From Octopus bimaculoides (Eukaryota), in NCBI RefSeq assembly GCF_001194135.2, contig NC_068992.1, positions 32,597,003 through 32,637,147 on the forward strand: a DNA stretch of 40,145 nucleotides, written 5' to 3'. Made by a program: the position numbers and the translations under genes. This document shows positions 105 to 40,145 of the stretch, in pieces. Positions within the stretch are counted from its first letter, which is position 1; each line of letters starts with the position of its first letter. The notes beneath the pieces are model-generated. The model was not told where the DNA came from. It did no database searches and saw only the letters and a list, made by a program, of their open reading frames with translations.

Positions 105-2598
105 ATTATGGTTGATTTTTTTTATGAGGTCTAACAGAAGTATTATACCGAAGTTTCTATGGGGAAGATTTATTAGAAGGTACATTTTTTAAATACTGAA
201 TTATATCCAGTTTGTATATATATATAAACAGCATGTTGGATATATTTCAGTATTTAAAACCTGTATCTTCTAATAAATCTTCCACATGGAAACGACGGAA
301 TAATATTTCTGTTAGACATCATAAAGAAACCAACCATAATGTAGATGGTGCCTCATGTAGTTGAATATTAACTTTGGCCTGCATAAGAAGGTGATTTCAT
401 GGTAAAATCCTCTTTACGCAATACATTAAGTTATGCAGATAGTTAAACATTCCTTAGAGCGTAATTTCCCTCGCACTTGCAAATACAGGAAAATTTATAA
501 TAAACACAAAACTAAACTTTCGATTTCGACTGCGCCTAACTTAACTGATAACATCGCTACTACTAATCATTATACATTGTGAAGGTTGTCACAGAGTAAG
601 CACAGCATAGATACAAACGTGAATTAGGCACCCTCCTAAAGCTTTCTCTTGTTGTCAAGTATCAAATGCCTGTGGGGATATAAGCAGGTTACAAAATTAG
701 GTTATTCTCTGTGTAGTTAACACTAAGAAAAATGCTCCTGTTATTAACTCTTAAAATGATTGAGCGATCGTTTGCCAAATTACTGATTACTACGAAAACT
801 GCAATATATTCGATAATGAACAAAACTTGAAATTTGATGTGAGTGCTAGCAAAACTCTCCTCATCAAAGTCTCTCGGCGCCTTTATCCGTAATAAACCCA
901 ACTGTATCATTACTATTAATTATAATGGTAGCAATGTTTTTAATATTAGTCGTTATCTAAAAATACGGGGAAATCGTTTGAATAACTAGAATAATAGTAA
1001 TACTAGTACTTATAAGGACTATAATGCAAATTGCGGTTGTTGAAATAAAAGTACTGGTAATGCTCCTCCTAGTGATACGCTACCGATTTAATAAGAGATT
1101 GCATATTTCCAGCGACTAACTGAAAGCCCACTAAATAATAAATGTTTCATCAATAATATTATTTATAAATCCACAGCTGCAGCTCCGAATCTGGTATTCA
1201 TATATATATATATATATATATNNNNNNNNNNNNNNNNNNNNNNNNNNNNNNNNNNNNNNNNNNNNNNNNNNNNNNNNNNNNNNNNNNNNNNNNNNNNNNN
1301 NNNNNNNNNNNNNNNNNNNNNNNNNNNNNNNNNNNNNNNNNNNNNNNGTGTGTGTGTACGTGTGTGAGTGTGTGTGTGTATGTGTGTGTGTGTGTGTGTG
1401 TGTGTTCACATAGGCGCTGCTGCCAACAGATTCGGATTAGTTGCATAATTTATTAACTTCATTAATATTAATTATTTAGGTATTAAAATAAAAGGGTATT
1501 AGTTACAAAATTTTATGTTCTATTATAAGAAACGCTATGCATTAATCTGGTTGAGGCAACTGCTGATCTTTGTGATGCATGGAAATTCTTGAAATCTTTC
1601 AATGTACGAAGAATCTTATTAATTAATGAAATTGGAGTTGCATATAAGTTATCCACATAGGATCAGTAAATCTATTCGATATCATAAACTTATATAATGA
1701 CTGTACCTGCTGTATTACTGGAGCTGTTAACAATGTAATTTGATTTGAATAATTAGTATCATATCTTAATTACACTGTTGGTACTTAATTTGAATTTTTT
1801 TTTTTATTGATATGTATTTTTACTCTAACGCGGTTTGTTGAATATCTTAACCGTAAAAGAGTGTGAACAACAGCAATTATAATCCGATACACTATTAATT
1901 AATGATAAAATATTAACATTTATCAATAAATATGCTAGCAATAACGATTAATAACTAATTTTTGTTAATAATTTCAGTATGAATTATTCATTAGACTTTA
2001 ACTTGTCTTTTTAATGCTAATGTTAACAATATTTAAGATAACACACTAAACTAGTAAATGTCAGTATGCTCACATATCTTCCTTGTTAAATTTTATTCAT
2101 TATTAAACGCCTCAATTTAACTACTTGTGATTTTTACTGAGAAGATGATTAATTCCGTGATAAAATTACACAGTTTTCTCTTACCTGAGCCAGACATATT
2201 TAAGGTAATCGTTAATGAAACATTTTTTAAACATAATTCAATTAAATAGTCTTTCCTAACATAATAATGTCACGATAATATAATGTTATTCCTCTCGTTT
2301 TCTTAGAATCGAAATTGCTGTTGATTTCCTCTTGATAAAGAGTATGGCGTCAATATACTTACTTGTCCCTGTAAATAATATAACTACATTTAGTACTTCG
2401 TGTTTTTTTTACATCGAAATTTCTAGATTAACTATATTATCTTATTTTACGTAAATTCCAAACATGGTTCACACTTAACAACTACACATACAAAAGTTAT
2501 TAGTATATATATATACACATATATATATATACATATATATATATGTACACATATATATATACATATATATATGTACACATNNNNNNNNNNTACACACG

Positions 2599-2633
<35 letters not shown>

Positions 2634-3053
2634 TCAAAAATTTGTGTAATACAATATGTATGCTAGCAATATATATGCATATATGTATATATATGGTGCA
2701 ACGCCGTGCCGATAACCAGCTGGTAGAAGATCTTTCTGGGGTTTCCTAGAAGTAACATGGAACAGCCACTTTGATGTGGCTTCAAATTTACTTGTTAGTA
2801 TATTTACCACTCTGATCTCTTCATGAGATTTTACAACTAGCTATTTTGCTTATATATATATATATATATATATGTTTAATTGTGGCACAGCAAGGCACCA
2901 ATGTTTGGTAGAAACAGTAGTCGATAACAGTACGACGCAACACAAAGCTTCACTGAATGTATACAGACAAAGATATGTGTGAGCGGCGAACATAGAATAT
3001 TTTCGTCGCACCTCAAGGAAAAACACTCGATTAAAGGACAACCTAGAATGGAT

Positions 3054-3129
3054 AACCTAGTACTAGAGTTTCGGACTTTCCAGAATACTCTTGTTATCGG
3101 AAACCCTGCCAGTCTTCTTCAGCTAGGTT
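3054..3129 (-). ncRNA. Type I hammerhead ribozyme motif, family A copy 0 (best preserved)
   Basis: Minus strand: AACCTAG-CTGAAGA-AGACT..(43 nt domain)..AGTCC-GAAA-CTCTAG-TA-CTAGGTT. Perfect 7-bp stem I, intact CUGANGA and GAAA boxes, GUA cleavage triplet. Stem II closing pair is A.C. Confidence 0.8.
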
Positions 3130-3148
3130 CATCGAAGACGAAATTTAA

Positions 3149-3233
3149 AACCTAGCTGAACAAGACTAACAAGACTAACCAGATTTACGATAACAAACGT
3201 ATTCAGCAAAGGCCGAAACTCGGGTACTAGGCC
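3149..3233 (+). ncRNA. Type I hammerhead motif, family A copy 1 (core mutated)
   Basis: AACCTAG-CTGAACA-(9-nt duplication AAGACTAAC)..AGGCC-GAAA-CTCGGG-TA-CTAGG. G8 of the core is changed to C, so probably inactive. Confidence 0.65.
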
Positions 3234-3567
3234 ATTTATTCGGCGTTCTTTCTACAGGGAAGACAAAATTATTTCATGTTCGCTGCCTATATAAATGTTT
3301 GCCTATATACATTCAATGAAGCTTTACATAGCGTCGTACGGTTATCCACTGCAAACATTAGTGCCTTGTTGTGCTATTATTTCCTATTTATAATTCTACC
3401 TTTACAATGTTTTATTTAGCTTGAAAACAATACTATTGTATTGCAATAATATTTATAAATTTTTTATATAAAACTTTTTCAATGATCTCTGTTCTGTTTA
3501 CGGCTAGGCGTATCAGCCGAATATACTGGCATTGATGTAGCGGATATTTTAAATTTCGTCGTCGGTG

Positions 3568-3643
3568 AACCAAGCTGAAGAAGACTAACCAGATTTAAGA
3601 AAACTAACGTATTCTCGTAAGTCCGAAAATCGCGTACTAGTTT
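3568..3643 (+). ncRNA. Type I hammerhead motif, family A copy 2
   Basis: AACCAAG-CTGAAGA-AGACT..AGTCC-GAAA-ATCGCG-TA-CTAGTTT. Core boxes intact; stems I and III partly mismatched. Confidence 0.7.
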
Positions 3644-4861
3644 ATCCATTCTAGGCTCTCCATTTATCCAGCGTTCTTCCTAGAGGTAAGACAATTTTTT
3701 TCTTTATGTTCACCGCCCGCATACATCTTTGCCTATAGGTATTCAGTGAAGATTTACATAGCGTCGTACGGTTATCGACTACTATTTCCAGAAAACATTG
3801 GTGCCTTGTTGTGCCACTATTTCCTGTTTATAATTCCACCTGAATGGTGCTTTATTTAGCTGGATAATAATATTATTGTATTGCAATACTATTCATAATT
3901 TTTAGACATTTAATAACAGAGTGCCGTGAGCACCACCTCAGCCATCTTTGAGGTTATTATATCATTTTCTTTGTGTCGACATCTAGAATCCGAAAAAGTT
4001 GGGAGGAAGAATCGGTGAGGTTTGCAATAAGGTCGAAAATCCGGCTGAAAAAATTGTACCTCGATGCTATTACCACAACGATCGCCCACCCAAACTCAAA
4101 CTAAGGAGTTTAGTAACGTACCATCGTAAGCACACACGTTCAATCAATAACTTTGGCGTTGGTCCCTGAATCGTTTTTGAGGTTTTATGGCTCAGTTTCT
4201 AATATTCCTCGTTACCATCATAACGATAATGGGCTATTATCTTACTATCTTGTCTTACTTCCCTCTTAAATATATTTACATTGGTATATTAAAACACAAA
4301 CAATACCTTTGGGAGGTCGTTCTATGCTTTTTCTAGATATTATGGCTAAAAATATGTAATGTGAGACTCGTTCCTTGTCGGGATATCATATTCTTAAAGG
4401 CACGAGTCTTTGACTGCGTTTTTTTAAAGTTGTGGCGCTTGCGACGGTCTGTTACTAAACGCCTCACCGGCAGAATGATATCCTTGCATTGTATGCAGAC
4501 AATTAGACCCAGCTGATTATATAATCCGCTCTTGAGCTATTCAGACATGTACATTTTATTGAATATGCAGTCCATATCATACTTCAGAATTTGTGAGGGG
4601 CATTGCTGAGACAGGTGAATAAAATATAAATAAATAATAATTGAAGGACCGGTGTCAGTTCATTACGGCCGTTTGTAACGAATCCTTTAATTGATTAACG
4701 AGTACATTATATTATTATAAAGAACCCGTTTTCCGCAGATACTTAATGACATGCCAAATGTTTTAACATACTTTAAAATGCACGGAGCGAAACACTTTCA
4801 CTGATTCTGCTACAATTTTAGTTGACAGATTCAATCAACTGAAATAGTAGACGAATTAGTG

Positions 4862-5914: not shown

Positions 5915-6350
5915 TATACTGATATTTTGAGTTGTATTATAATGCTTACAATTTCTGTATAAAAATGTCCACTGTTCTCGGTTCTGTTTATGGCTTCGGC
6001 TATCAGTTGAGTGTATAAGGAATTGATATAGCGGATATTTAAAATGTTGTCTTTCGACGAACCAAGTTGACTAGAACTAAACAGATTTATGATAACAAAC
6101 ATAACCTGTTAAGTTCGAAATTGGAGTACTCGGTTATATATTTTCTATTGCGTTGTCCTAGTAGTACGATGAAAACATTATTTTATTCGCCGTCCACACA
6201 CATTTTCGCATTTATACATTCAGTGAAGCTTTACTATGGTGTCATACGGTTATCGACATCCATTTCCAGCAAACAATGGTATCTTCTTGTGCCACTATTT
6301 CTTATATATAATTCAACATTTAGGGTGCTTATCGCTGGAGAACAATATAT
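5915..6350 (+). repeat. Solo, roughly unit-length copy of family A repeat
   Basis: Colinear with 3430-3880 (GTTCTGTTTA.GGCT, GCGGATATTT, CATTCAGTGAAGCTTTAC, TTGTGCCACTATTTC). Followed by (GT)n at 6360-6405. Confidence 0.85.
6060..6135 (+). ncRNA. Type I hammerhead motif, family A copy 3 (core mutated, stems intact)
   Basis: AACCAAG-TTGACTA-GAACT..AACAG..TTATG/CATAA..CTGTT..AGTTC-GAAA-TTGGAG-TA-CTCGGTT. Confidence 0.6.
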
Positions 6351-6355
6351 AAATA

Positions 6356-6411
<56 letters not shown>

Positions 6412-6427
6412 CATACAAACACGTGTG

Positions 6428-6467
6428 TGAAGGCGCACGGCTGAGTTGTTAGAGCGTCGGGCTCACA
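6428..6467 (+). mobile_element. Truncated tRNA-like SINE head
   Basis: GAAGGCGCACGGCTGAGTTGTTAGAGCGTCGGGCTCAC: A-box-like segment between (GT)n and (TA)n. Confidence 0.4.
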
Positions 6468-10121: not shown

Positions 10122-11564
10122 GTTCATATTTTAATTTAAACCTGGGAATGTCTTTTTCATTGGACGTTTCTAATACTTATTTGCTCTCCGCTACATATTC
10201 GGAGTTACAATTTTTACTTATATTTTCAAATAATCGTTGAAGCCATTTGTTATGGTTAAATACACGACATGACTCACACGTCTTTCTCACATGAATAATA
10301 TGAATCTACTAGTTCCAATGTTTCTGCTATATTCCTTCTAAAGTTCCTTGTATTATAGATTCTACTTCCTGCACTGGAGAGTGCGTTGATTTTTAATCTA
10401 TTTAAGACAAGAAAAAAAAAATATATATATATGCATGCATACTGAAATTCACGTTATTGAATTTCTGAATTCAGTTGTGTTGTTGCAATAAAATGTGTGT
10501 TTACGTATTTGGGTAATATATTAAAGTTTTAAAGTTTTCCTCAGTCGTTCCTTTGTCTGTCCATTTTGGAGAATACAGTAGGACTTTTGCAATGAAAATG
10601 TAAACATCCTTTTCATTGCAAAAGTCCTACTGTATTCTCCAAAACGGAGAAAAGAAAACAAGTTGCAGATAGTAAAGTTTTAAGACTTACTAAATATGGT
10701 CTTGTGTATGACCGCACAGAGAGAAATGGTAGTGTTCTTAGAATAAAAAGGCGGATGATGTTTGTTACTATTATTATTACTATTATTATCAATATTATTA
10801 ATATTATCAGTATTATTATTATCATTATTATCATTATTATTATATCTCTGTACGAGACGACCGTCTGCAAGAATTAAAATTCTTGTATATTTTAACATGT
10901 CTCCTCCATTTTTAACTAAAGTGATGAGTTTTATGGGACTTTATTCCATAAATTCACTATACAATATGTGTATGTGTGTGCAGTTAATTAAAATGACGGA
11001 GAAAAAGACAAGAAAAATAACAACGGGAGGACGTAGTACCTGCAAATTATTAATGGGACCCCCAGTGAAGGAAATAAAGAATGGTTGTTTTACGTTTTGG
11101 GCATAACCCTTCTTGGAAACAGAAGACATAAGAAAGTCCAAAAGAAAAGGAAGAAAGAGGGAAAAATCGCCAACAGTCCACGCATACTTACATTATTGAA
11201 ATGATCTGTAGATGGACAAAGAGAAAGTGCTTCCTAGGACAGAAGAGTGTGAAGAATGGTTAGTATATATGTGTATGTGTGTGTCTGCGTACCTGTGTGT
11301 GTGGTAGCACGTGTGTGTGGTAGCACGTGTGTGTGATAGTGTGTATGTGTATTGTAGCGTGAGTGTGTATGTGTGTGCGCGTGGAGAAGTGTGTGTATAT
11401 GTGCATGTGCGTGAGTGAGGAAATGTATGTACGTATCTGTATGTATATGTGTGCATATATGCCTGGGCATGTATGTATGGGCTGTTCGTATGTGTTGTGT
11501 GTAGAAGGTTGTATGTGTGTGTGGAGATATACGTGCGTTCGCGTGTGTGTGCCTGCATATATAT
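10122..11564 (-). repeat. Right inverted arm of Penelope-like element, with ~400 bp extra sequence at ~10400-10820
   Basis: Reverse complement of 6967-8003 at roughly 75-80% identity (visual estimate). Both arms keep a short coding relic (M/L)LKY..IL/RL.LAD.R.VQRY. Confidence 0.9.
10564..10644. other. Perfect 35-bp inverted repeat with 11-nt spacer
   Basis: TTTTGGAGAATACAGTAGGACTTTTGCAATGAAAA (10564-10598) is the exact reverse complement of 10610-10644. Confidence 0.95.
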
Positions 11565-11616
11565 ATATACATATAAAAGGAGAAAATATTTGTTATTATT
11601 ATTATTATTATTATTG

Positions 11617-11894: not shown

Positions 11895-11898
<4 letters not shown>
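11617..11898 (-). mobile_element. 5'-truncated R4/Dong-like (RLE) non-LTR retrotransposon in a (TAA)n tract
   Basis: Minus strand 11898-11812 reads IPGNPQMAEVQKIVLMGSAHILRKILSM*, the QK..L.G(T/S)AHILR C-terminus typical of R4/Dong/CRE-type elements. It is followed by ~190 bp of 3' UTR, with (TAA)n on both sides (11593-11615, 11896-11935). Confidence 0.75.
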
Positions 11899-11935
<37 letters not shown>

Positions 11936-12111
11936 NNNNNNNNNNNNNNNNNNNNNNNNNNNNNNNNNNNNNNNNNNNNNNNNNNNNNNNNNNNNNNNNN
12001 NNNNNNNNNNNNNNNNNNNNNNNNNNNNNNNNNNGTGGATTTGAAAAATTATAACATATAAGCACAAGACATGTACTCTATTACCTCGTATTTATATGTA
12101 AGTCTTGGCAA

Positions 12112-12181
12112 TCCTGCTGATGAGAGCTTCGCCTAGCAAATTATTTATTTGCTGAAGAGAGGTTGAAACCATTGTCCAGGA
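12112..12181 (+). ncRNA. Type I hammerhead motif, family B copy 1
   Basis: TCCTG-CTGATGA-(41 nt, inner hairpin AGCAAAT/ATTTGCT)-GAAA-CCATT-GTC-CAGGA. Confidence 0.75.
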
Positions 12182-12567
12182 AATAGTTGCTAATTGTTTT
12201 TATTTTTATTCATTTTCGAAATTACCCCTAATAGTGGTTTGGATTGTGACTACTCCCTCTAGTGGGTTCGATGTCCTATTATGGACATATTTTATGTGTT
12301 TAAATGTACACTTATATGAATAATATATAGACTATTTATTAGTTTTTCTACACGCTAGGCCACTGGTAATAAAACAATTCTAAATAAGTTTTTTCTACCC
12401 TGAAATTTATTAATGATAATGTTTTGGCTAATTTTGGAAGAATGTCGACGTTATTTATATTTGCTGCCTACAAAAAACTGCGCTTGCGCGGTGGATTTGA
12501 AAAGTTATAACATGTAAGCACAAAGCATGTACTGTATTGCCACGTATTTATATGTTAATCTTGGCAC

Positions 12568-12638
12568 TCCTGCGGATGAGAGCTTCACCTAGCAAGTTAC
12601 TTTATTTGCTAAAGAGAGATTGAAACCATGGTCCGGGA
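12568..12638 (+). ncRNA. Type I hammerhead motif, family B copy 2 (U4 to G core change)
   Basis: TCCTG-CGGATGA-..-GAAA-CCATG-GTC-CGGGA. Stem I is kept by a G.U wobble. Confidence 0.65.
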
Positions 12639-13029
12639 AAAAGATAGTAAATGTTTTTATTTTTCATTTCCTTTCAAAATTACCCCTAACAGTGGTTTGG
12701 ATTTTGACTATTTCTTCTAGCAGGTTAGATGACATATTATGGCGTTCTCTCATGTGTTTCAATGTACACTGTATTTATATGAACAATATATAGTCTATTG
12801 ACTAGTTTTTCTACAGGCTAGGTCACTGGTAGTAAAAAAGTCATAAATAATTTTTTGCTACCCTGAAATTTATTAATAATAATCTTTGGCTAATTTTGGA
12901 AGAAATTCGGCACTATTTTTATTTGCTGCCTTCAAAACACGGCGCTTTCGTGGTGGATATGAGAAGTTATAACTTGTAAGCACGAAGCATGTACTGTATT
13001 TCCGCGTGTTTAAATGTTAATCTTGGCAC

Positions 13030-13100
13030 TCCTGCTGATGAGAGGTTCGCCTGGCAAATCACTGTATTTGCTGAAGAGAGGTTGAAACCATGGTCCAGGA
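13030..13100 (+). ncRNA. Type I hammerhead motif, family B copy 3 (best preserved)
   Basis: TCCTG-CTGATGA-(42 nt)-GAAA-CCATG-GTC-CAGGA. Intact cores, 5-bp stem I, palindromic ACCATGGT stem III, GUC triplet with cleavage predicted after 13095. Base of stem II is imperfect. Confidence 0.8.
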
Positions 13101-13993
13101 AATAGTTGCTAAATGTTTTTGTTTTTCATTCACTTTCGAAATTACCCCTAATAGTTGTTTGGATTTTGACTACTCCTACTAGCGGGTCCGATGTCCTATT
13201 ATGGACAGGTTTTATGTGTTTNNNNNNNNNNNNNNNNNNNNNNNNNNNNNNNNNNNNNNNNNNNNNNNNNNNNNNNNNNNNNNNNNNNNNNNNNNNNNNN
13301 NNNNNNNNNNNNNNNNNNNNNNNNNNNNNNNNNNNNNNNNNNNNNNNNNNNNNNNNNNNNNNNNNNNNNNNNNNNNNNNNNNNNNNNNNNNNNNNNNNNN
13401 NNNNNNNNNNNNNNNNNNNNNNNNNNNNNNNNNNNNNNNNNNNNNNNNNNNNNNNNNNNNNNNNNNNNNNNNNNNNNNNNNNNNNNNNNNNNNNNNNNNN
13501 NNNNNNNNNNNNNNNNNNNNNNNNNNNNNNNNNNNNNNNNNNNNNNNNNNNNNNNNNNNNNNNNNNNNNNNNNNNNNNNNNNNNNNNNNNNNNNNNNNNN
13601 NNNNNNNNNNNNNNNNNNNNNNNNNNNNNNNNNNNNNNNNNNNNNNNNNNNNNNNNNNNNNNNNNNNNNNNNNNNNNNNNNNNNNNNNNNNNNNNNNNNN
13701 NNNNNNNNNNNNNNNNNNNNNNNNNNNNNNNNNNNNNNNNNNNNNNNNNNNNNNNNNNNNNNNNNNNNNNNNNNNNNNNNNNNNNNNNNNNNNNCGAAAC
13801 CACTATGATATATTGGGTCGTTGGCTGACGAGGAAATCGTCTAAGTTTTAGTGTAGTTTTCCGTTTGTTCTGCTTTCGTTTTTTCTCTTTCCTTTCCCTT
13901 GTTATGTTCTTTCATTTCAAGCCTTGATCTCTCCCCGTCCCTGTCTGTGTGACTGTTTGTCTCTCTGTCTCTGTACACGCACGCACGCACTCA

Positions 13994-19056: not shown

Positions 19057-19231
19057 TCTTCTTCTTCTTCTTCTTCTTCTTCTTCTTCTTCTTCTTCTTC
19101 TTCTTCTTCTTCTTCTTCTTCTTCTTCTTCTTCTTCTTCTTCTTCTTCTTCTTCTTCTTCTTCTTCTTCTTCTTCTTCTTCTTCTTCTTCTTCTTCTTCT
19201 TCTTCTTCTTCTTCTTCTTCTTCTTCTTCTT
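19057..19231. repeat. Uninterrupted (TTC)n microsatellite, ~58 units
   Basis: Direct inspection; source of the poly-K and poly-L ORFs in the track. Confidence 0.97.
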
Positions 19232-20084
19232 TTCCAACGTTCTTTTGAATGTTGATATGTTCGCGTCTTTTCTATGGATGTTTTTCAATATCAGGACTTT
19301 AATCCACATGGATTTACACTAGATTGCACCTAAGGACTTATGGATTTATTACTACAAGATTGTGACGTTAAACTGTGAACTTTTATGCTTCTTCTTTCTT
19401 CTCTTTCTTCATCTTCTTATTCCTTTACTCTATGTCGTCATTTCATTAATCTATATCCTTCTCATTTTCCCTGTTTGTCTCCGATAACAGAATATCCCAT
19501 ACTCTTGGATATCCCAGAAACAGCTGTAAGACTTTGAATTCTTTTCCAATAATAATAAGGCATATGACGTGAGATGTTTGCCTTGCCTTAACGTTTGTTG
19601 TCCTCTATAATGACTATATATCCGCTCTATCGAAAATCTGCTATGGCTCCATAAGTGCCGCCTCGGCNNNNNNNNNNTTTTGTTCTGCAAACCAGTACCT
19701 TCTTTTAGGATGAACCTTAAAAATGACCATGAAAATATACATAGATAATTTTATACGTACATGCATATTTACAATTAATACGTGCACTTATATATATTCT
19801 CACAGGCATGAAAAACTTTAACAAAAAAGGAAATGAAAAGATATAAATCTGGTGATCCTATGCCCACACTACATCATTAGGTTTTTATCTAGAATTAATG
19901 AGGTATTGTGTTACGAATATTTCGATACTATTTCCTTAAAAAGAGAAAGGTCATTGGTAATTAGAAAATTACAAGGCAACAAACTACTGAAACTAGAAAT
20001 ATCAGCAAAATATTCCACAATCAAACCTTTAGTACATACTTATAATCATATACATATATACATTTAATGCCAAAGTATTTGTAC

Positions 20085-20345: not shown

Positions 20346-23300
20346 CAGTAAGTACATAAGAACACTCACGTAGGTAAAACACTATAGATGCACAGTATTA
20401 CATATGTACATGCACATGCATACATGAACGCACAGGTACATACGTATGTACTTACATACGTACGAACATGCCTATCTTGTTGATATGTAAATTCTAAGGA
20501 AAAGAAAGACCTTGATTTTGCATAGGATACTGAGAAGGGAATATGCTGAATAAAATTATAATTAACTGATTCTCCGGTATATATTTTTTTTCAACTAAAG
20601 CCAAATATTTTCAGCACCTCCTGGTACATACGCTCGCAAGATCAAATAAATTTCCATCATTGTTCGGATATATTTATAATCAACTGAATTATCTTCTAAT
20701 TTAGCAATTATAGGGTAAATTATTCCACAAACACGTGTATCATTAACACGGTTTTCAGACAGAATCAACACGAGAGAGCGTTCAATAAAACTGAACCTTT
20801 GAATTACTTGAACAGTTAATCTGACGAGATTTAGCAGAGTTTCTATCGAATCTCACTCATAAATGCCAAAGCGATTCGAGGTTCTGGTAAAATACCATTT
20901 GTCAAAATGCTAGAGAAACTAACCTCGTGCTGTACAAGCAAGCTTATTACTCAGACTTGCTACTTTCATCCACACACACTCACACACACGCGCACAGCAT
21001 TTCCATAATGCACCCACACACATTTCCATAATGCATATACATACATACATACATCCATCCATCCATCCATCCATCCATCCATACATACATACATACAGAC
21101 ATACATATGTATATAAGCATACATGAATATAAACTGATAGATCTATACGCTCATCAACTCCATCTAGAGATTTCAATGTCGAACAGGCTTGATTAAAATT
21201 TGAAGTTTGTTGAAGCTAGTATAAGATAAGGGCGGGAATTGATAATCATGATAAATATAGATTTCTGTTTTTATATTTGGAAAGTTCATATGAGCTATTA
21301 ACTTTTGATTGTCAAATCAGCAGTATTGATATATCAAACTATTAGTGAAGTGTAGGAATCCATTTACACTGAAGTTGATGATCTATGACAAAAGATGTGA
21401 CAGATTACGTTCAGATACATGAAGAAGATGACGGTATTGTGATGAAGAGGGGAAAATAGCGATGAACAAGAATTGATAAATAAGTGGCATGTATAATTTT
21501 AATGATTTGAATTAAATCACCGTCTGGTGATAAGCGAATCACATTACTTAGATATTACTAAATTACTTTATTCATAGTAGCCGCATCATTGTTATCGCTG
21601 AAAACTCATTTTGACTGTAAAATACTATGAATTTATTGATTTCTCTCAGAACTCGAAGAAAAAACTGAGAACAACTGATTTTCTCATATTTGTGCGAATA
21701 ATTCTGAGTTTTATATGCTATCACTGTTACTATATCTTACAACATTATGAATATTTATACGCTTTCCTATAATTATGATTATTTATAATAGACAACAATT
21801 TAAAGTCATTCTGATTTCAGCACCCGTAATTGAAGACATTGGTATTATGTTGTTGTTTACTGCGGTGAAACATTACTTCTGGTTTTTACTCTCAGTAGAA
21901 TTTTTGCAGCAGTATAAGCCGTCTAACAGACATATATTTATGTTATAGTCATTGCTACCATCAGGGCTTCGACCGCTACATTATATTTTATAAATGACAA
22001 ATCGCTGACCTGTTGAGATATAACGATATTTCTCATAGTGCATAGCTAGTGGAAATGTGCAAATCAATTGCCTATCGGAGTAGCTATTTACTGCTAATTG
22101 GAATTAATTTTAAAAAGTCTCAAAGACCACAGAGATCCACAAATGAGGGAATACCATCTGTCTCTCTCTATATGTTGATTACTATTTCTCTATATTTTGA
22201 TTACTAACAAACGGAAAGATGGTCTTGGTTGATAAAAGAGTAAATGATGAAAGTGTCAATAAGATATTGAACAAGACCATACTTCAGATTTCGTATAAAC
22301 AACAGGAGATTTTTGTTTCATTCATTTCAGTATTTCTCTAACTATGTTTGTAGTTGATATTTAATGTCATCGATTAAATTGGACAAGATAAATGCTTTTA
22401 AATTAATGACCAGCAGAAAACAGTCTGAACACAAATGCTCACCAACTACAACGTAGCTTCTTTTATTTACATGTTTAACCTATTCGAGTTCCAACCGTGC
22501 TTAAAGGTGCAGTGAATGGTCTACAAGTTTTCAGATTGAAATTGAACAATGACTGAGATTCTCTGAAACAATAAATACGTCTACTTTTACAACTAGCTTT
22601 ATTTTCTGAAAAAGAGCTAATATCACTAATTCACTTTGCAATACACTTCAACACGTATGAAGGAAATATATAAAATATTTCGATAGTGAAATTCTAAGTA
22701 AACGTTTAAGATTTTACTGATAGCATAGTGCCACAAAAATGTCTCTGTATCACGCTATTAAATAAGTAAGTACATATAAGATGAACTCATCAAAAATGCA
22801 AACCATATTACAAGCAGAACGAGCAGCAACTTTAGTGGAGAAATATCTGAATAGTGACATTTACGTAATACGTTCTGGTTCAGAAGTGAGGAAATTCCGA
22901 AGTAATTAGGAAAAATATATCAACTTTCTTTCTTTCTTTTACCTTTTAGGTGTTCAATTAGATTCCGAAGTAGAATAAAATGAAAGAACATATTTTTGGT
23001 TATCTTTCATGTCTTATGATGGAACAAGACAAAAAAAGCAAAGCAAATAATTGAAATATTTTGTTTAAAGTCAGCGTACATTTCAGTCAAAATGTTATCA
23101 ATTCTAAATAAGCGGAATCATACTATAGTGTAAAAGGTTGCTTGCAATAATAGTTTCAAGTTTCCACGAACAGATATATTTTAGGAGCCATCAGTATGAA
23201 TTTTATCATTTTCATGTATGTTTATCCCGTTGCTCTTCTTCCACATTATCTTTCTTTCTTAATTCTCCCTCCTCTTTATTAGTATATCTCTCTTGCTCTG

Positions 23301-26845: not shown

Positions 26846-27570
26846 TTTTTCCCTTTATTTTTATAATTTAATTTTTCGTTTTTACAAAGGCCTATGAAGA
26901 TTTTCTGTACTGGCACATGAGGTTTAATGCAATGATCTGGTTTATATTTTGCTAATTTTATCCATCCCCAACATTAAATATTTTTATACGTAATATATAC
27001 TATTTGCTATAAGACCCAAAGAAAATAAACGTGCGGTGTTACTTTCTTTATGACTCTCTTTCAAGTTATCATTTATACTTGCAAGTTATTAATGTTTATT
27101 TAGTAAATTAATTAAATGACTTTTCAGCAGAGTTCAACACTTGGTGCATAATATCAAATACTAGGACTTTTACTATTTACTAATAATTATATTTATTTGT
27201 TTTCAATTTATGGTTTGCATATATTTTGTTATTGTGAAATAGGCAGTGACATTGTTATCAGTTAAATGAAGCTTCCTTGGAACAATCTTTATATTCTACA
27301 TATTCTAACGACAATACTATGACTTCTAAAATTGTCAAATTATGGAGGAAGTAAGAATACTAAAGATGAAAGGTTCATCTACATACAAGGAAACTCGATA
27401 TATAGAGGATGTACTAAAGGTAGATTTACATATATGCACACACTCACATACACACACTCACATACACACACACACACACATATATATCTATAGCTCATCA
27501 ATGTGTACATATATCCTCATATACAAAAAGAATTATTTGATTGCGAATATTCGTATAAACGTGCATATCC

Positions 27571-27605
<35 letters not shown>

Positions 27606-28625
27606 TGTATGTATGCATGTATGTATATATATATATATATANNNNNNNNNNNNNNNNNNNNNNNNNNNNNNNNNNNNNNNNNNNNNNNNNNNNNNNNNNN
27701 NNNNNNNNNNNNNNNNNNNNNNNNNNNNNNNNNNNNNNNNNNNNNNNNNNNNNNNNNNNNNNNNNNNNNNNNNNNNNNNNNNNNNNNNNNNNNNNNNNNN
27801 NNNNNNNNNNNNNNNNNNNNNNNNNNNNNNNNNNNNNNNNNNNNNNNNNNNNNNNNNNNNNNNNNNNNNNNNNNNNNNNNNNNNNNNNNNNNNNNNNNNN
27901 NNNNNNNNNNNNNNNNNNNNNNNNNNNNNNNNNNNNNNNNNNNNNNNNNNNNNNNNNNNNNNNNNNNNNNNNNNNNNNNNNNNNNNNNNNNNNNNNNNNN
28001 NNNNNNNNNNNNNNNNNNNNNNNNNNNNNNNNNNNNNNNNNNNNNNNNNNNNNNNNNNNNNNNNNNNNNNNNNNNNNNNNNNNNNNNNNNNNNNNNNNNN
28101 NNNNNNNNNNNNNNNNNNNNNNNNNNNNNNNNNNNNNNNNNNNNNNNNNNNNNNNNNNNNNNNNNNNNNNNNNNNNNNNNNNNNNNNNNNNNNNNNNNNN
28201 NNNNNNNNNNNNNNNNNNNNNNNNNNNNNNNNNNNNNNNNNNNNNNNNNNNNNNNNNNNNNNNNNNNNNNNNNNNNNNNNNNNNNNNNNNNNNNNNNNNN
28301 NNNNNNNNNNNNNNNNNNNNNNNNNNNNNNNNNNNNNNNNNNNNNNNNNNNNNNNNNNNNNNNNNNNNNNNNNNNNNNNNNNNNNNNNNNNNNNNNNNNN
28401 NNNNNNNNNNNNNNNNNNNNNNNNNNNNNNNNNNNNNNNNNNNNNNNNNNNNNNNNNNNNNNNNNNNNNNNNNNNNNNNNNNNNNNNNNNNNNNNNNNNN
28501 NNNNNNNNNNNNNNNNNNNNNNNNNNNNNNNNNNNNNNNNNNNNNNNNNNNNNNNNNNNNNNNNNNNNNNNNNNNNNNNNNNNNNNNNNNNNNNNNNNNN
28601 NNNNNNNNNNNNNNNNNNNNNNNNN

Positions 28626-28657
<32 letters not shown>

Positions 28658-30749
28658 AACATATAAAGCCTATGTACTTTCGTATACATTGTCTCATTAT
28701 AATCATCATCATCATCATCATCATCATTTTCTCATCATGACACACAACAAATCTTAACTTCGTGTCTCTTTTATCTTGGTCTGAAAGCTTTTGCCACATA
28801 TAGTATATCACAGCGGAACGTGATAGTACTTGAGGCATATCATCTTACCACGGTCCAATGTTCATTTTGATTTTCGCATCATACGTAAATTTGACAGTCA
28901 CAATATTTTGCAGAGCTTTTTATTTAAATTCCATTCAGCACGCGTTGAAATTGTGTTCATGTTCACTTATTTCTTTAGTATTAAGTTTCACTAAACAGAG
29001 TCTTGTCAGCACAATTTCTTTCTCAATGGACATTACTGAATACATCTAGTTGAGCTACTACATATTTTTTTCTTTAAGTTTGAGCAACATGATTTAAATG
29101 ATTAACATAACTGTACTCGTCAGTATAATATTACTACATTATTTTCCACTCTGCAAATCACTCTTTTCTTTTCTGATCATGGACCCACCAGCTTTTCAAT
29201 GTCATTGATATTGCAATCTGTTCATAGCAGAATTTCGATAAATATATTAGATTTTACAGTAAAGAAACTGCTTTCTCGAAACATGGCACAATGAGACTAT
29301 TCGCATCATAATACATATCACCGCTTTTAACCTTATTAAGTACATTCTTTGGAAAGCGTGTCAGTTCTACTTTGGTCATTGTTTAGTGTCTTTTGTAAAT
29401 GATTTTCTCTTGAATTATTTGTATGATTTGATCCCCCCACCCATTTGTGTGAATTCATGTAGCTGTATGTGAAAAACAAATGATTCTTTTCAAAACATTT
29501 TTCGTTCCTGGGTGGCAATATTTCGTTTCTAATTGTATTTCATAAACAATTATTCAAAAATTATTAGCATTTCTATCACACTTAACTTCGATATCTGCCA
29601 CAAAGTGATAATTTCAATGTAATTTAATACAACTGGAACGCAGCAGACGTTTAACATCTCCATACGCTTCAGAAAGATGAACAGCATATAAATTATATTT
29701 AAAGAGTAATTGGCTTAAGTGAACAGGAAAGTTTAAAATTTAGTAGTTTCTCAATATTGAGGATTATAATGTTATTCACTTTTACGCCTCAGCTTGAAAT
29801 TCGCCTGCCATTCTGTTTTAATTATAACAGACTTCAAAATCTAGTGTATTCTAAAGAAACGATCGCTCTTCGTAATGACCAACTATGACCAACATTAATT
29901 TTTCAAGATTTGCACAAAGGCTGTGAACTTTTCTTGAAAATCTCTAGCACTTATTGCTTTACGCTAGAACCAGAGTCACCATATGATTCGCATATTCTTC
30001 TACAATGTGATTATCCAGGGAGCTACAAAATTAATGCACAACGCTGCCAATCCAAGACTGCTTTTTGCCGTCTTACTGATTTTGATGAAGAATTCCATGT
30101 ATTACCGTCTAATCACGCTCTTTATCTGCAGATGAATATTCAGTGACTCTCCTGCTATTCCTCATGCCTACTAACACTTTCTCTTATTGAGAGCTGTAGT
30201 GTGAGGAGTGGTAATTGACAGAATTGCAGACAATGTAACCTCTCATAACTCTCTCTCTCCCTCCTACATATATGTTTTTCTCTCACACAGATTTATATAT
30301 ATATATGTATATATATANNNNNNNNNNNNNNNNNNNNNNNNNNNNNNNNNNNNNNNNNNNNNNNNNNNNNNNNNNNNNNNNNNNNNNNNNNNNNNNNNNN
30401 NNNNNNNNNNNNNNNNNNNNNNNNTATATATAATGTACTGAACTCACTCTCTCATAGGATGTTACCTCTCATAACTCTCTCTCTCTCTCTCTCTCTTTCT
30501 CACACACACACACACACACACGCGCGCGCACATTTATTACTTCTCTTACTTCATTCTTTTTTTAACCGGTTGCGTTCTTTTCAATGTTTCTATCAGCGGT
30601 GTCATTTTGAAAAAAGATGCTGTTAGTCTTCGGTGAAAATTACAATTACACCATATTTGTAAAACACTATCTTCAAGTGCTATTTTTTTGTTATTGAATT
30701 GCTCTAAACGAATTTGACCATAAATATGTTGGAGATTTAGTACTTTTTA

Positions 30750-31186: not shown

Positions 31187-34100
31187 GTGCCCAGAAAAAG
31201 AAGGGCAACAACCTGTCTCGAAAAGTTCCTTGTTCACAAAAGATTACTGAGTAAAGACAACAGACGTTAATTGAAGAAAGCAAACAAGGACTTAGCTCTT
31301 CTCAGTATCTCGAAGTAAAGCAAAGGTGATCGCAAGAAACCCGTGCAATGGAAATACCGGAAGAAACAGAGGCACGGAAAATGCAGATAGACAGAGGGGA
31401 CAGGAAACCCGAGCAATGGAAAAACTATAAGATTCAGAAGCACGGAGGAATGTGAATCGGATAAGAACACTGGAAACCAGCGCAATGGAAAAACCAAGTA
31501 AGCACGGAGAAAAGTGAATCGGCTGAGAACATAGAAAATCCGTGCAATGGAAACACCACGAGAAACAGAAGCACGGACAAATACTGATCGGCTGAGGAAA
31601 CAGGATTCTAGGGAAAAGACGTCGCTGCCACAAATTCAGCAGCGAAAAGCAAATAACCAGGCACGATACTAATCGCGACTTCCTCAGGAAAGAACGGGCA
31701 CTGAGAGAATGGCTAGAGTAGTTGATATGGCAGATTCTCATGAGAAAAAACGAAACCCAAGCCTGATGATGTTGCACTACTGTGAACATGTTTTTAACAG
31801 AACATGTCCTGACTGCAAAGCTTACTTTTGGGGTGCTAAGAAAACTAGCCTCTGCTGCGGCAAAGGAAAAATTAGCTATGACAAAGTTCCACAGATAAAA
31901 AAAAAACCCACAGAATTAATAGCTAAGTACTAAGATGTTAATCTAAGTGGTCAAAAGTTTCTGAACAAAATTCTTGACTACAATAATTTACTGTCTATGG
32001 CTTCACTTGGACTGAATAATTCATCAGTCGTAGCGTAGGATGTTAGCACTTTTATGCCTACTTTCAAGATTCAAGGAAATTTGTGCTACCGCATTGGAAG
32101 TCTTCTACCAGCAGTAAATAGGAAGCCAGTTTACGCGCAGCTATATATTGTTGACACTGAAGATGAGATGAGAAACAGGTTGTCATTCAGAGGATCAGAC
32201 AATGGCTTAATGAGAACATCTTGCTAGACTTGCAGAGAGCATTGCATATGCACACTCCATTTGTAAAGTTTTTAACAGGCTATTGATATAATCAAGGAAT
32301 ACTCTGCGCTAGGAAAATGTTCTACCGGTGATATTATTATAAGTCATGACAAAGGGCTTATTCCCGCTGCGTCACATGAGAGAACCTATAATCCACCAAC
32401 TGCATCAGAAGTTGATGTGATCATAGTGGGAGATGTTATCAATAATACCAATATTAAACCTGCGGATGTTGTTGTGCAGTACAGAGAGAACAATGGGAAG
32501 TAACATTAATCAGATCAACAGAAGCTATGACCATCTTCATTATGTACTTCTGTTTCCCTATGCAGAAGATAGCTGGAATTTGTTTTTTGAAGGATAATGA
32601 CCGAAGCAAAAAAAATCACTGTGACTTTTATTCTTATCGGCTTCAGATAAGATAGAAAGATCAAGATCGATTACACTTCCTGAGAACTCATCAAAAACAG
32701 CTTAAGGCTGAAAAGTACCAGGGCCTTCTAGATGTTATTGCAAATGGTAGTATGTATAACGTAGGGTCTAAAATCATTGCTCCCCCATCACACACTGGTT
32801 ATCCTCGATCTTACAGGGAGAGTTTCCAAGCTGAAATTGCTCTGGTGAGAGAGTTTGGAAAGCCAGACCACTCCATCACAATGACAACTAACACATACTG
32901 GACTGAGATAACGGATGCCCTGTTTGAAGGTGAAAGAACACAGGATCGACCTGACATTGCAGCCAGAGTGTTTAAAATGAAGTACGACTCTCTGAAGTAT
33001 GATCTATTAAAAAAGAGTGTCTTGGGAAACGTAATAGCACATGTCTCTACATATTGCTCTTTATGGCTGCTACAGACACGCCAAGAACGCCAGAGATCAT
33101 TGATCGAGTTTTATGTGCAGAGATACCAGATAAGGATATGAATTCAGACCTATTGGAGATTGTTGTAAAAAATAACATTCGTAGACCCTGTGGATGCCAT
33201 CCAGAATACAGACGCCAGTCACCAATCTTTGGAGGCAGGACACACATTATTAGAACTACTCGGACATCTACTGAAGTACGTAATAGCTTCATAGTGCCGT
33301 ACAACCCCCCCCCATTCTTATTTCTCCGATACAACTGTCATCTAAATGTTGAGGTTGTGCACACTGTACTCGCGGTGAAATATCTTTTGAAGTACCTCAC
33401 TAAGGGCCTGATAGGGTCAACGTTCATATCTGATCAAGCAGTACTGATGAAACAATTGGAATACTGCAAGAGTTTAACAATTCAAGCCTTAAATTGGTTG
33501 ATAATGAAATTGACACTTACCAAAATACATCTCATCTGGTGAGGCAATTTGGAAGATATTCTGGATTTCAATCCATTCCAGACAACCCGCTGTCATAAAT
33601 CTTTCATGCCATTTGAAAAATCAACAATCTCTTACTTTCGATGCTGAGCTACCTGAAAACATTGAGCTTGTAGCAAGAACAACTTTGACTGAGATTTTCA
33701 CATTACATAAATATGACTGCGACGCCAGAGACAAGCTATATGCTGAAATTCCAAAGTATTACACTTGGAATAAAGAAGAAAAGTGGCAAAATAGGAAAAG
33801 GGGAACAATCGGATGGAAACTATAAAACCAGTACTATTGGTCGCATACCCATTGTCGCTTACAATGTCCAGCAGAAGGAATTATATTACTTGAGGATGCT
33901 ACTACATCGTGTCAAAGGTCCCCAATTATATGCTGACTTACGGATTGTTAATGGTGGTCTATGTTTCAACTATCACGATGCGTGCACAAAGCTGGGACTT
34001 TTACAAGACGATGACGAAATCATTAGAACATTAGATTAAACCAAACATCACTGTTTCAGTGACCAGCTAAGACACGTATTTTGTACTGTTCTCCTCACTT

Positions 34101-38490: not shown

Positions 38491-38563
<73 letters not shown>

Positions 38564-38582
38564 CAGCAGCAGCAGCAGTAGC

Positions 38583-38633
<51 letters not shown>
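38491..38633. repeat. (GTA)n microsatellite with (GCA) interruption
   Basis: Direct inspection; source of the poly-V and poly-L ORFs. Confidence 0.95.
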
Positions 38634-39965: not shown

Positions 39966-40105
39966 AACGAATAAAAACATAAAGAAAGACATATGTACTC
40001 ATATATGCATAGATGCACACCAGTACACATAAACAAGTACGTAGGCACATACACATTTATACATAAATACATATATACACACTCACACACACACACACAC
40101 ACACG

Positions 40106-40145
<40 letters not shown>

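What the first reader, a model, noticed from the sequence alone, without database searches (positions are those of the whole stretch)
12035..13221. Family B: 457/462-nt tandem array with a type I hammerhead motif in every monomer
Seen: three consecutive motifs TCCTG-C(T/G)GATGA-41/42 nt-GAAA-CCAT(G/T)-GTC-C(A/G)GGA, with predicted cut sites at 12176, 12633 and 13095. Substitutions in stem I (CAGGA to CGGGA) and the inner stem II hairpin (AGCAAAT, AGCAAGT, GGCAAAT against ATTTGCT) all keep pairing through G.U. Stem III is the palindrome ACCATGGT with no usable loop. Established: this is the architecture of dimeric hammerheads in newt satellite 2 and of metazoan non-LTR retrozymes (typically a few hundred nt). 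Inference: a read-through transcript would be cut into ~460-nt monomers able to circularise. Caveat: the base of stem II is weak (G.U, A-U, then a mismatch), so these copies may be slow or dead.
Basis: partly seen in the sequence, partly recalled or inferred. Interest (0 to 1): 0.85.

Follow-up and report, generated by a model that had tools for sequence, protein, structure and literature searches.

The report
Decayed hammerhead retrozyme-like tandem repeat
A 1.2-kb island of ~460-bp tandem repeats, probably in an octopus-type genome, carries in each unit the remains of a self-cutting "hammerhead" RNA motif like the one that lets retrozyme repeats make small circular RNAs; it is a new example of a known kind, and each of the three visible copies is damaged in a different way.

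Summary
Positions 12035-13221 are 2.6 units of a 457/462-bp tandem repeat (units 83-87% identical). Each unit has a + strand type I hammerhead layout with predicted cut sites at 12176, 12633 and 13095. The array is a contig island between two assembly gaps, so its length and ends are unknown. The layout fits newt-satellite-2/retrozyme hammerheads: a 5-bp stem I plus a 6-7-bp distal extension, CUGAUGA, GAAA, GUC, and a loop-less 8-nt palindromic stem III that can pair only between two units (hairpin 0, duplex -12.6 kcal/mol). The support is architectural only. Rfam Hammerhead_1 scores are 20.2 and 21.7 bits (gathering score 34), and copy 2 gets no hit. There is no compensatory covariation and no extra conservation of the motif. 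No related sequence turned up in any collection I could search. Each copy has its own lesion: copy 1 a broken palindrome, copy 2 a U4-to-G core change and a lost distal stem I, copy 3 a C-to-G change in stem II. The three-copy consensus repairs all three. Most likely this is an old, probably inactive genomic copy of a non-LTR retrozyme-type repeat in a cephalopod. That makes it a new member of a known kind, of modest interest.

The parts
12035..13221 (+). Tandem array, 2.6 units of 457/462 bp, GC 33-35%, no ORF longer than 57 aa. It is a contig island between assembly gaps.
   Evidence: TRF; blastn of the monomers against the window finds no copy outside the array; ORF list; GC
11936..12034 (.). 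Assembly gap (99 N) that hides the left end of the array. A (TAT)n microsatellite lies just before it at 11896-11935.
13222..13794 (.). Assembly gap (573 N) that cuts unit 3. The sequence after it is unrelated to the monomer.
12035..12491 (+). Unit 1 (457 bp)
   Evidence: alignment A1
12492..12953 (+). Unit 2 (462 bp), the most diverged unit: 25 private substitutions against 14-15 in the others over the region shared by all three.
12954..13221 (+). Unit 3 (268 bp visible, truncated by the gap)
12105..12193 (+). Hammerhead-like motif, copy 1. Core intact (CUGAUGA 12117-12123, GAAA 12165-12168, C17 at 12176). It has the best stem II and a 7-bp distal stem I, but stem III is ACCAUUGU (palindrome broken; self-duplex -0.9 kcal/mol).
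   Evidence: Rfam Hammerhead_1 20.2 bits
12561..12650 (+). Hammerhead-like motif, copy 2. Core box is CGGAUGA (U4 to G, 12573-12579), GAAA 12622-12625, C17 at 12633. Distal stem I is lost (3 changes) and stem II has C opposite A. The stem III palindrome is intact.
   Evidence: no Rfam hammerhead hit at E<=10
13023..13112 (+). Hammerhead-like motif, copy 3. Distal stem I 13023-13029 with 13106-13112; proximal stem I 13030-13034 with 13096-13100; CUGAUGA 13035-13041; stem II 13042-13083 (C to G weakens its base); GAAA 13084-13087; palindrome ACCAUGGU 13087-13094; C17 at 13095; internal loop AAUAG 13101-13105.
   Evidence: Rfam Hammerhead_1 21.7 bits
13033..13047 (+). First arm of a 15-nt internal direct repeat (UGCUGAUGAGAGGUU), covering the core box and the 5' side of stem II. 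The equivalent in copy 1 is 12115-12129.
   Evidence: read directly from the sequence; P about 0.00025 in shuffles of the segment
13069..13083 (+). Second arm of the direct repeat (UGCUGAAGAGAGGUU, 14/15 identical). It forms the 3' side of 'stem II' and holds a second CUGANGA box that has no usable stem II. The equivalent in copy 1 is 12150-12164.

Best explanation
This is an old, mutationally decayed genomic copy of a non-LTR retrozyme-type (newt satellite-2-type) tandem repeat. The host is probably a cephalopod.

The ancestral ~460-nt unit carried one + strand type I hammerhead. Its stem III is a loop-less 8-nt palindrome, so it cannot close as a hairpin and must pair with the same segment of a neighbouring unit (a double hammerhead).

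At this locus the units have since diverged by 13-17%, and each hammerhead carries a different lesion. The locus itself is therefore probably processed poorly or not at all. In the double-hammerhead topology the core of one unit cuts the site of its partner. On that basis only the site at 12633 has neighbours with intact cores.
For: Shown by the sequence:
- A tandem array of period 457/462, low GC (33-35%) and no coding capacity.
- All type I elements in the right order and on one strand only.
- Copies 1 and 3 are picked up by Rfam Hammerhead_1 as full-length 1-45 alignments, with no non-standard pairs in stem III of copy 3.
- Stem III has hairpin energy 0.0 but a homodimer energy of -12.6 kcal/mol. 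The unconstrained cofold of consensus x consensus (-54.8 against 2 x -23.4) adopts the 8-bp intermolecular stem III with stem I strands paired in trans.
- An extra 6-7-bp distal stem I with an AAUAG internal loop appears in the MFE folds of copies 1 and 3.
- The majority consensus of the three copies repairs every lesion, as expected for independent decay from a better ancestor.

Chance:
- The descriptor hits 0.0025 times per window. Multiplying by 0.056 and 0.11 for the features outside it gives about 1.5e-5 per window. That is roughly one occurrence in a 2-3 Gb genome, before requiring it to sit in a tandem repeat of retrozyme-like period.

Context:
- The + strand monomer folds somewhat better than shuffles (z -1.4 to -2.1), while the - strand does not (z -0.3 to -0.4).
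- The nearest relative of the window's Helitron fragment is from Octopus vulgaris, and 235 Hammerhead_1 loci are reported in the giant squid genome (PMC6962438).
- A second, unrelated repeat family in the same window has the same layout.
- Published class features and precedents for a weak helix II base and for dimer dependence are in PMC7229834.
Against: - No copy reaches the Rfam gathering score (34 bits). Scaling the E-value suggests about ten hits at 21.7 bits by chance in a Gb-scale genome.
- Position 11.1 is U, giving G10.1.U11.1 instead of the near-universal G-C.
- The catalytic register of stem II is 3-4 kcal/mol worse than a register shifted by one base that leaves G10.1 unpaired.
- The 3' strand of stem II is a direct repeat of the 5' strand rather than an evolved complement.
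- The canonical monomer fold lies 9-14 kcal/mol above the MFE, which pairs the CUGAUGA box with the stem III segment.
- There is no compensatory covariation, no excess over the shuffle control, and 7 broken cells against 4 preserved changes.
- The hammerhead segment is not clearly better conserved than the rest (84/92/84% against 83/84/84%).
- The whole-monomer fold is only 60-64% paired with modest z-scores, weaker than the 'highly self-paired' circles described for retrozymes.
- Only one locus is available. No relative was found in the viral, metagenome or prokaryote-genome contig collections or among proteins.
- The array ends are hidden by gaps, so target-site duplications and copy number are unknown.
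Confidence: 0.7

Rival explanations
1. It is an ordinary tandem repeat or satellite whose monomer resembles a hammerhead by chance. There is no ribozyme ancestry and no RNA life cycle.
For: - Rfam scores are sub-threshold.
- The loose descriptor would hit of the order of 100 or more times by chance in a Gb-scale genome (scaled).
- Stem II is flawed, and its 3' strand is a direct repeat of the 5' strand.
- There is no covariation and no extra conservation.
- Only one locus was seen.
Against: - Adding the distal stem I and the 8-nt palindrome brings the joint expectation to about 1.5e-5 per window, and it is lower still once a tandem-repeat context is required.
- The palindromic stem III matches the family-specific Rfam format.
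- The lesions differ between copies and the consensus repairs them.
- Type I hammerheads are already annotated in cephalopods.
Confidence: 0.08
2. It is part of a Penelope-like element: tandem 5'-truncated 3' ends or a pseudo-LTR carrying the element's own hammerhead. It is not an independent non-autonomous retrozyme.
For: - PLE insertions are often 5'-truncated partial tandems, carry type I hammerheads in their pseudo-LTRs, disrupt short-read assemblies and favour microsatellite targets (PMC8557442).
- This array is a gap-bounded island next to a (TAT)n run.
- Retrozyme families are reported to be sister to PLE pLTRs (bioRxiv 10.64898/2026.07.22.740005).
Against: - Three consecutive units of equal ~460-bp length, with the hammerheads 457-462 nt apart, fit a short-unit array. 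They do not fit a 3-4 kb element with closely spaced minimal hammerheads.
- The long ORFs of the window that I scanned contain no RT or GIY-YIG domain; the only domains found belong to a Helitron.
- The hammerhead has a long stem I and stem II and is not 'minimal'.
Confidence: 0.12
3. The locus is a currently active retrozyme array. It is transcribed and cut at all three sites into ~460-nt RNAs that circularise.
For: - Copies 1 and 3 keep all 13 core nucleotides plus stem I.
- The HHR segments fold at -17 to -25 kcal/mol, passing the -5 kcal/mol filter used.
- Weak helix II bases are tolerated in axolotl HHR_Amex2.
- Units hidden in the gaps could be intact.
Against: - Copy 2 has U4 to G in the core. 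From memory of hammerhead mutagenesis, core substitutions cost orders of magnitude in rate.
- Copy 1 cannot form the stem III duplex (-0.9 kcal/mol).
- Copy 3's stem II in the catalytic register is only -3.6 kcal/mol.
- The 13-17% divergence between neighbouring units indicates long neutral decay.
- The criterion of two consecutive complete hammerheads is not met.
Confidence: 0.1

Closest known systems
Newt satellite 2 / axolotl HHR_Amex1 retrozymes (about 330-bp tandem repeats with dimer-dependent type I hammerheads; PMC7229834)
   Same: Tandem non-coding repeat of a few hundred bp, one type I hammerhead per unit on one strand, and a helix III too short to close as a hairpin with a palindromic centre, so that two units must pair.
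   Different: The unit here is longer (457-462 bp). Helix II is 41-42 nt with a bulge and an internal loop instead of a short hairpin. Its base pair is G.U, not G-C. The conserved loop 1-loop 2 contacts cannot be recognised. The host is an invertebrate, and invertebrate hammerheads were reported as mostly monomer-competent.
Axolotl HHR_Amex2 retrozymes (about 350 bp)
   Same: Two-base-pair helix III capped by four nucleotides, and a weakened base of helix II (a U-U mismatch there, G.U followed by a mismatch here). That family was shown to cleave poorly as a monomer and well as a dimer.
   Different: There is no sequence similarity. Helix II is much longer here. Activity was shown for Amex2 and not for this element.
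Mytilus galloprovincialis retrozymes (350-390 bp; the characterised mollusc example)
   Same: Mollusc host, similar unit size, low GC, and a hammerhead lacking the archetypal loop-loop nucleotides.
   Different: The mussel motifs self-cleave as monomers (kobs about 0.1 per min) and number about 5000 copies with abundant circRNA. None of this is known for the present repeat, whose stem III predicts dependence on a dimer.
Rfam RF00163 Hammerhead_1
   Same: Full-length alignment to all 45 model positions for copies 1 and 3. The core letters and the 4-pair loop-less stem III match.
   Different: Scores are 20.2 and 21.7 bits against a gathering score of 34. There are 33-36 extra nucleotides in helix II, non-standard pairs at its base, and no hit for copy 2.
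Minimal type I hammerheads of Penelope-like element pseudo-LTRs
   Same: Type I topology, reliance on dimers, association with tandem structures and with assembly breaks.
   Different: PLE motifs are minimal, sit close together in tandem and lie beside an RT/GIY-YIG ORF. Here the motifs are 457-462 nt apart with long helices I and II, and no such ORF is nearby.

Membership tests
Hammerhead ribozyme, type I (Rfam RF00163) | Conserved core: CUGANGA box, GAAA, and a U-H cleavage dinucleotide after helix III | tested here: inconclusive
   Complete in copies 1 and 3. Copy 2 has CGGAUGA (U4 to G).
Hammerhead ribozyme, type I (Rfam RF00163) | Three helices around the core, with helix I open-ended (type I order) | tested here: met
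   Stem I 5 bp plus a 6-7 bp distal part, stem II 41-42 nt, stem III A-U and C-G around CAUG. The order is I-core-II-GAAA-III-UC-I'.
Hammerhead ribozyme, type I (Rfam RF00163) | G10.1-C11.1 pair closing helix II next to the core | tested here: not met
   G10.1.U11.1 in all three copies. The catalytic register is 3-4 kcal/mol less stable than a register shifted by one base.
Hammerhead ribozyme, type I (Rfam RF00163) | Score at or above the curated gathering threshold (34 bits) | tested here: not met
   No hit at gathering score. Copy 1 scores 20.2 bits, copy 3 scores 21.7 bits, copy 2 gives no hit.
Hammerhead ribozyme, type I (Rfam RF00163) | Site-specific self-cleavage 3' of position 17 | not testable with these tools
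   Needs in vitro transcription of monomer and dimer constructs.
Metazoan non-LTR retrozyme (Cervera & de la Pena 2020) | Short head-to-tail tandem repeats (150-450 bp; 51-972 bp in the 2026 survey), each carrying a type I hammerhead | tested here: met
   Period 457/462, 2.6 units, motif in the same position in each unit. This is just above the 2020 range and inside the 2026 range.
Metazoan non-LTR retrozyme (Cervera & de la Pena 2020) | Low GC (<50%), no protein-coding capacity | tested here: met
   GC 33-35%. Longest ORF 57 aa, with no homologue.
Metazoan non-LTR retrozyme (Cervera & de la Pena 2020) | No LTR, PBS or PPT; target-site duplications at the array ends when present | not testable with these tools
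   Both ends of the array lie in assembly gaps.
Metazoan non-LTR retrozyme (Cervera & de la Pena 2020) | [quoted passage not shown] 2026) | tested here: not met
   Units 1 and 3 are complete by core, but unit 2 between them is not.
Metazoan non-LTR retrozyme (Cervera & de la Pena 2020) | Monomer RNA predicted to be stable and highly self-paired | tested here: inconclusive
   Circular fold z -1.45 and -1.7, 60-64% paired. The minus strand gives z -0.3 and -0.4.
Metazoan non-LTR retrozyme (Cervera & de la Pena 2020) | Many genomic copies; expression as linear and circular RNA of unit length | not testable with these tools
   There is no other copy in the window. No searchable collection holds the source genome or its transcriptome.
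Dimer-dependent (double) hammerhead of the newt satellite 2 type | Helix III unable to form as a hairpin but able to form an extended intermolecular helix through a palindrome | tested here: met
   For copies 2 and 3 and the consensus, hairpin 0.0 against duplex -12.6 kcal/mol, and the duplex is present in unconstrained cofolds. It is not met by copy 1 (-0.9).
Penelope-like element pseudo-LTR hammerhead | Minimal hammerheads in close tandem within the terminal repeat of an element encoding RT and a GIY-YIG endonuclease | tested here: not met
   Motifs are 457-462 nt apart with long helices. The long ORFs of the window that I scanned contain no RT or GIY-YIG domain. The immediate flanks are gaps, so this is not fully excluded.

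The most novel reading that the evidence does not exclude
Octopods may host a live retrozyme family whose hammerhead departs from the canonical form. Its departures would be a G10.1.U11.1 base pair (or a bulged G10.1) at the base of helix II, a 41-42-nt bulged helix II created by an internal duplication of the core box, and obligate pairing between neighbouring units through stem III. On this reading the family would yield abundant ~460-nt circular RNAs in cephalopod tissues, and the present locus would be one decayed copy. The duplicated CUGANGA box could then act as an alternative, inactive pairing partner that gates cleavage against ligation.
Probability: 0.12. Interest if true: 0.55.

Novelty: new member of a known kind. 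Interest (0 to 1): 0.33.

Why it matters
Tandem repeats that carry hammerheads are the source of very abundant small circular RNAs in corals, mussels and salamanders. No paper in the searched library describes them in cephalopods, although 235 Hammerhead_1 loci were counted in the giant squid genome. If the family behind this locus is active, it would extend retrozyme circRNA biology to a clade known for unusual RNA processing. It would also add a natural hammerhead with a non-canonical helix II base and dimer dependence in an invertebrate. As it stands, the locus is a single degraded copy, so its main use is as a seed sequence for a genome-wide and transcriptome-wide search.

Tried and rejected
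- **Related sequences.** The 57-aa monomer ORF has no protein relative. Hammerhead-anchored and spacer-anchored DNA patterns found nothing in the viral, metagenome or prokaryote-genome contigs. These collections are unlikely to hold animal DNA, so the negative says little.
- **Literature.** Exact-sequence strings gave no paper. No paper on cephalopod retrozymes or on a ~460-bp octopus satellite was found.
- **Source record.** A look-up of a window ORF found nothing on record.
- **Inner CUGAAGA box as the real core.** Rejected: its stem II would be GAGGUU and its stem I 4 bp with two G.U pairs. It gave only a 13-bit RAGATH-1 alignment.
- **Minus-strand hammerhead in the array.** None found.
- **Other weak Rfam hits in the array** (RsaH, TUSC7, HtrA thermometer; E 1-7). 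Treated as chance.
- **Covariance model R1 built from the three copies.** It finds only those copies. The next hit (20598-20695, minus strand, 15 bits) has no core elements. Family A at 3.0-6.4 kb is not detectably related.
- **Strand-asymmetric A-to-G excess** as a footprint of RNA editing before reverse transcription. A>G 9 against T>C 6, p=0.19, not significant.
- **Extra conservation of the hammerhead segment or of the core.** Not significant (one core change in 39 site-copies against about 2.7 expected).
Full report
**What is there.** Tandem Repeats Finder reports a single array at 12035-13221 with period 462, 2.6 copies and 83% matches. The three units align over their whole shared length (alignment A1) and are 83-87% identical pairwise. 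The array is a 1,187-bp contig island: 99 N precede it (11936-12034) and 573 N follow it (13222-13794). The sequence beyond the gaps is unrelated, and no other copy of the monomer exists in the window. The true length, the ends and even the placement of the array therefore depend on scaffolding. The units are AT-rich (GC 33-35%) and non-coding; the longest ORF is 57 aa and has no homologue.

**The motif.** The elements are UCCUG, C(U/G)GAUGA, 41-42 nt, GAAA, CCAU(U/G)G, UC and C(A/G)GGA, with C17 at 12176, 12633 and 13095. I add three features.

- Stem I continues beyond the 5-bp proximal helix. UUGGCA(A/C) upstream pairs with UUGCUAA downstream across an AAUAG internal loop, giving 6-7 more pairs in the unconstrained folds of copies 1 and 3.
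- Stem III cannot exist as a hairpin (0.0 kcal/mol), but ACCAUGGU forms an 8-bp duplex with a second copy (-12.6 kcal/mol). The unconstrained cofold of two consensus motifs (-54.8 against 2 x -23.4 kcal/mol) adopts this duplex with the stem I strands exchanged between molecules. That is the double-hammerhead topology. Rfam's Hammerhead_1 model itself encodes stem III as four pairs with no loop (ACGcgCGU), and copy 3 fits it without a non-standard pair.
- The strand read as the 3' side of stem II (UGCUGAAGAGAGGUU) is a 13-14/15 direct repeat of the core box plus the 5' side of stem II, 36 nt upstream. Its chance probability is about 0.00025 in shuffles of the segment. It contains a second CUGANGA box that has no usable helices.

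**How good a hammerhead is it?** It is not good enough for Rfam. Nothing in the window reaches a gathering score. Copy 1 scores 20.2 bits and copy 3 scores 21.7 bits against a threshold of 34, and copy 2 gives no hit. Scaling the E-value to one family and a 2-3 Gb genome gives roughly ten such scores by chance.

The weak points are these:
- U at position 11.1, giving G.U instead of the near-universal G10.1-C11.1 pair.
- A catalytic-register stem II of -8.6 (copy 1), -8.9 (consensus) and -3.6 (copy 3) kcal/mol. A one-base-shifted register that leaves G10.1 unpaired gives -12.4, -12.7 and -6.6.
- A canonical monomer fold that lies 9-14 kcal/mol above the MFE.

From memory, and not checked here, natural hammerheads tolerate an extra nucleotide between A9 and helix II (the chrysanthemum chlorotic mottle viroid case). 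Axolotl HHR_Amex2 works with a U-U mismatch at the helix II base. These flaws therefore lower the expectation of activity but do not exclude it.

**Chance.** A deliberately loose type I descriptor finds copies 1 and 3, and copy 2 only if the core is relaxed. It requires a 5-bp stem I, CUGANGA, two closing pairs of stem II, GAAA, one pair plus a 4-8-nt loop, and U-H. It occurs 0.0025 times per dinucleotide-shuffled window. That scales to of the order of 100 or more hits per Gb-scale genome, so the motif alone proves nothing. The distal stem I (P about 0.056) and the 8-nt palindrome (P about 0.11) are independent of the descriptor. The joint expectation is about 1.5e-5 per window, roughly one per genome, before requiring that the motif sit once per unit in a tandem repeat of retrozyme-like period. 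I therefore regard chance as unlikely but not negligible (about 8%).

**Conservation.** Three copies give almost no power. On the 30 proposed pairs, 92% of cells are paired, there is no change on both sides of any pair, and the shuffle control shows no excess. Seven cells are broken, and copy 2 also has a core change. The hammerhead segment is not clearly better conserved than the spacer.

What does carry information is the pattern of lesions:
- Copy 1 has lost the palindrome (self-duplex -0.9 kcal/mol).
- Copy 2 has U4 to G, C opposite A in stem II, and three changes that destroy the distal stem I.
- Copy 3 has C to G at the base of stem II.

The majority consensus repairs all of these. This is the signature of independent neutral decay from a better ancestor. 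It matches the 13-17% divergence between neighbours and a near-neutral substitution spectrum (30 transitions, 24 transversions; copy 2 has the most private changes).

**What it is and how it would work.** The published description of metazoan non-LTR retrozymes fits this element. That description covers short, low-GC, non-coding tandem repeats with one type I hammerhead per unit, sequences that differ between species, and a weak helix III that often forces dimeric action (PMC7229834 and PMC7761336). The unit length lies within the 51-972 bp reported in the 2026 survey.

The mechanism I commit to is the published one: read-through transcription, pairing of adjacent units through stem III, cleavage after GUC, ligation of the ~460-nt monomer by an RtcB-type ligase, and reverse transcription of the circle by a Penelope-like element enzyme acting in trans, which yields tandem insertions. 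Only the sequence architecture is shown here; every step of this cycle is inferred.

For this particular locus, the double-hammerhead topology means that each site is cut by the partner unit's core. Site 12633 could therefore be served by the intact cores of units 1 or 3. Sites 12176 and 13095 would depend on the mutated core of unit 2 or on units hidden in the gaps. The locus also fails the working criterion of two consecutive complete hammerheads.

**Host and context.** The window is a low-GC, microsatellite-rich, gap-ridden animal scaffold. It contains a frameshifted Helitron: Helitron_like_N at 32656-33138, PIF1 at 34660-35046 and the Pif1 2B domain at 35281-35622. The only database relative of that Helitron is an Octopus vulgaris protein at 74% identity, so the host is probably a cephalopod. 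No paper in the searched library describes retrozymes in cephalopods, but the giant squid genome paper lists 235 Hammerhead_1 loci. The long ORFs of the window that I scanned contain no Penelope-like RT or endonuclease.

It has a 7-bp stem I, CUGAAGA, a 43-nt stem II with an A/C mismatch at its base, GAAA, and a four-copy consensus stem III (ACUCGAGU) that is again an 8-nt palindrome. Rfam does not detect it, and the Family B covariance model does not relate it to Family B. Two such families in 40 kb make it more plausible that this genome is rich in hammerhead-bearing repeats.

**Verdict.** The claims of a functional motif in every unit and of processing into monomers at this locus are not supported. 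This is a new member of a known kind, of modest interest. It becomes more interesting only if a genome-wide consensus and RNA data show a live family with this unusual helix II.

Noticed in passing
window 3040-3135 (minus strand); 3155-3250, 3565-3660 and 6057-6152 (plus strand); also 3318-3412, 3758-3852 and 6236-6330: A second repeat family (about 410-440-bp spacing, plus an inverted partial copy) with a type I hammerhead-like layout. The best copy is on the minus strand at 3129-3054: AACCUAG-CUGAAGA-43 nt-GAAA-CUCUAG-UA|CUAGGUU. The four-copy consensus stem III, ACUCGAGU, is an 8-nt palindrome. The mix of inverted and tandem copies recalls Penelope-like element insertions. Rfam gives no hammerhead hit, and the family is not related to Family B by covariance model.
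   Followed up: partly
window 12115-12129 / 12150-12164 and 13033-13047 / 13069-13083: A 15-nt imperfect direct repeat inside each hammerhead, 36 nt apart, duplicating the CUGANGA box and the start of stem II. It suggests that the long helix II arose by an internal duplication or a template switch. Its significance for folding is unknown.
   Followed up: partly
window 32656-35622 (+): A degenerate, frameshifted Helitron (Helitron_like_N, PIF1 helicase, Pif1 2B domain). Its closest database protein is an Octopus vulgaris hypothetical protein (74% identity), the only clue to the host.
   Followed up: partly
window 31337-31580: A minisatellite of about 45-62-nt units (AAACCCGTGCAATGGAAA...CAGAAGCACGGA...), 4 copies or 2 x 62 nt, overlapped by a 165-207-aa ORF on the minus strand that has no Pfam match.
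   Followed up: no
window 2503-2690, 6355-6440, 11389-11577, 27395-27647, 36440-36612, 40056-40145: Dozens of sub-threshold Rfam 'microRNA' hits (mir-297, mir-3149, mir-1277 and others, 25-53 bits). All of them lie on (TG)n, (TA)n or (TATG)n microsatellites, so they are low-complexity artefacts and not miRNA genes.
   Followed up: no
window 1222-1347, 2581-2590, 11936-12034, 13222-13794, 19668-19677, 27642-28625, 30318-30424: Seven assembly gaps in 40 kb, several next to microsatellites. This is a short-read scaffold, so repeat arrays here are likely to be under-represented or misplaced.
   Followed up: no
window 19057-19231 and 38491-38633: Long perfect or near-perfect trinucleotide arrays: (TCT)58 and (GTA)48.
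   Followed up: no
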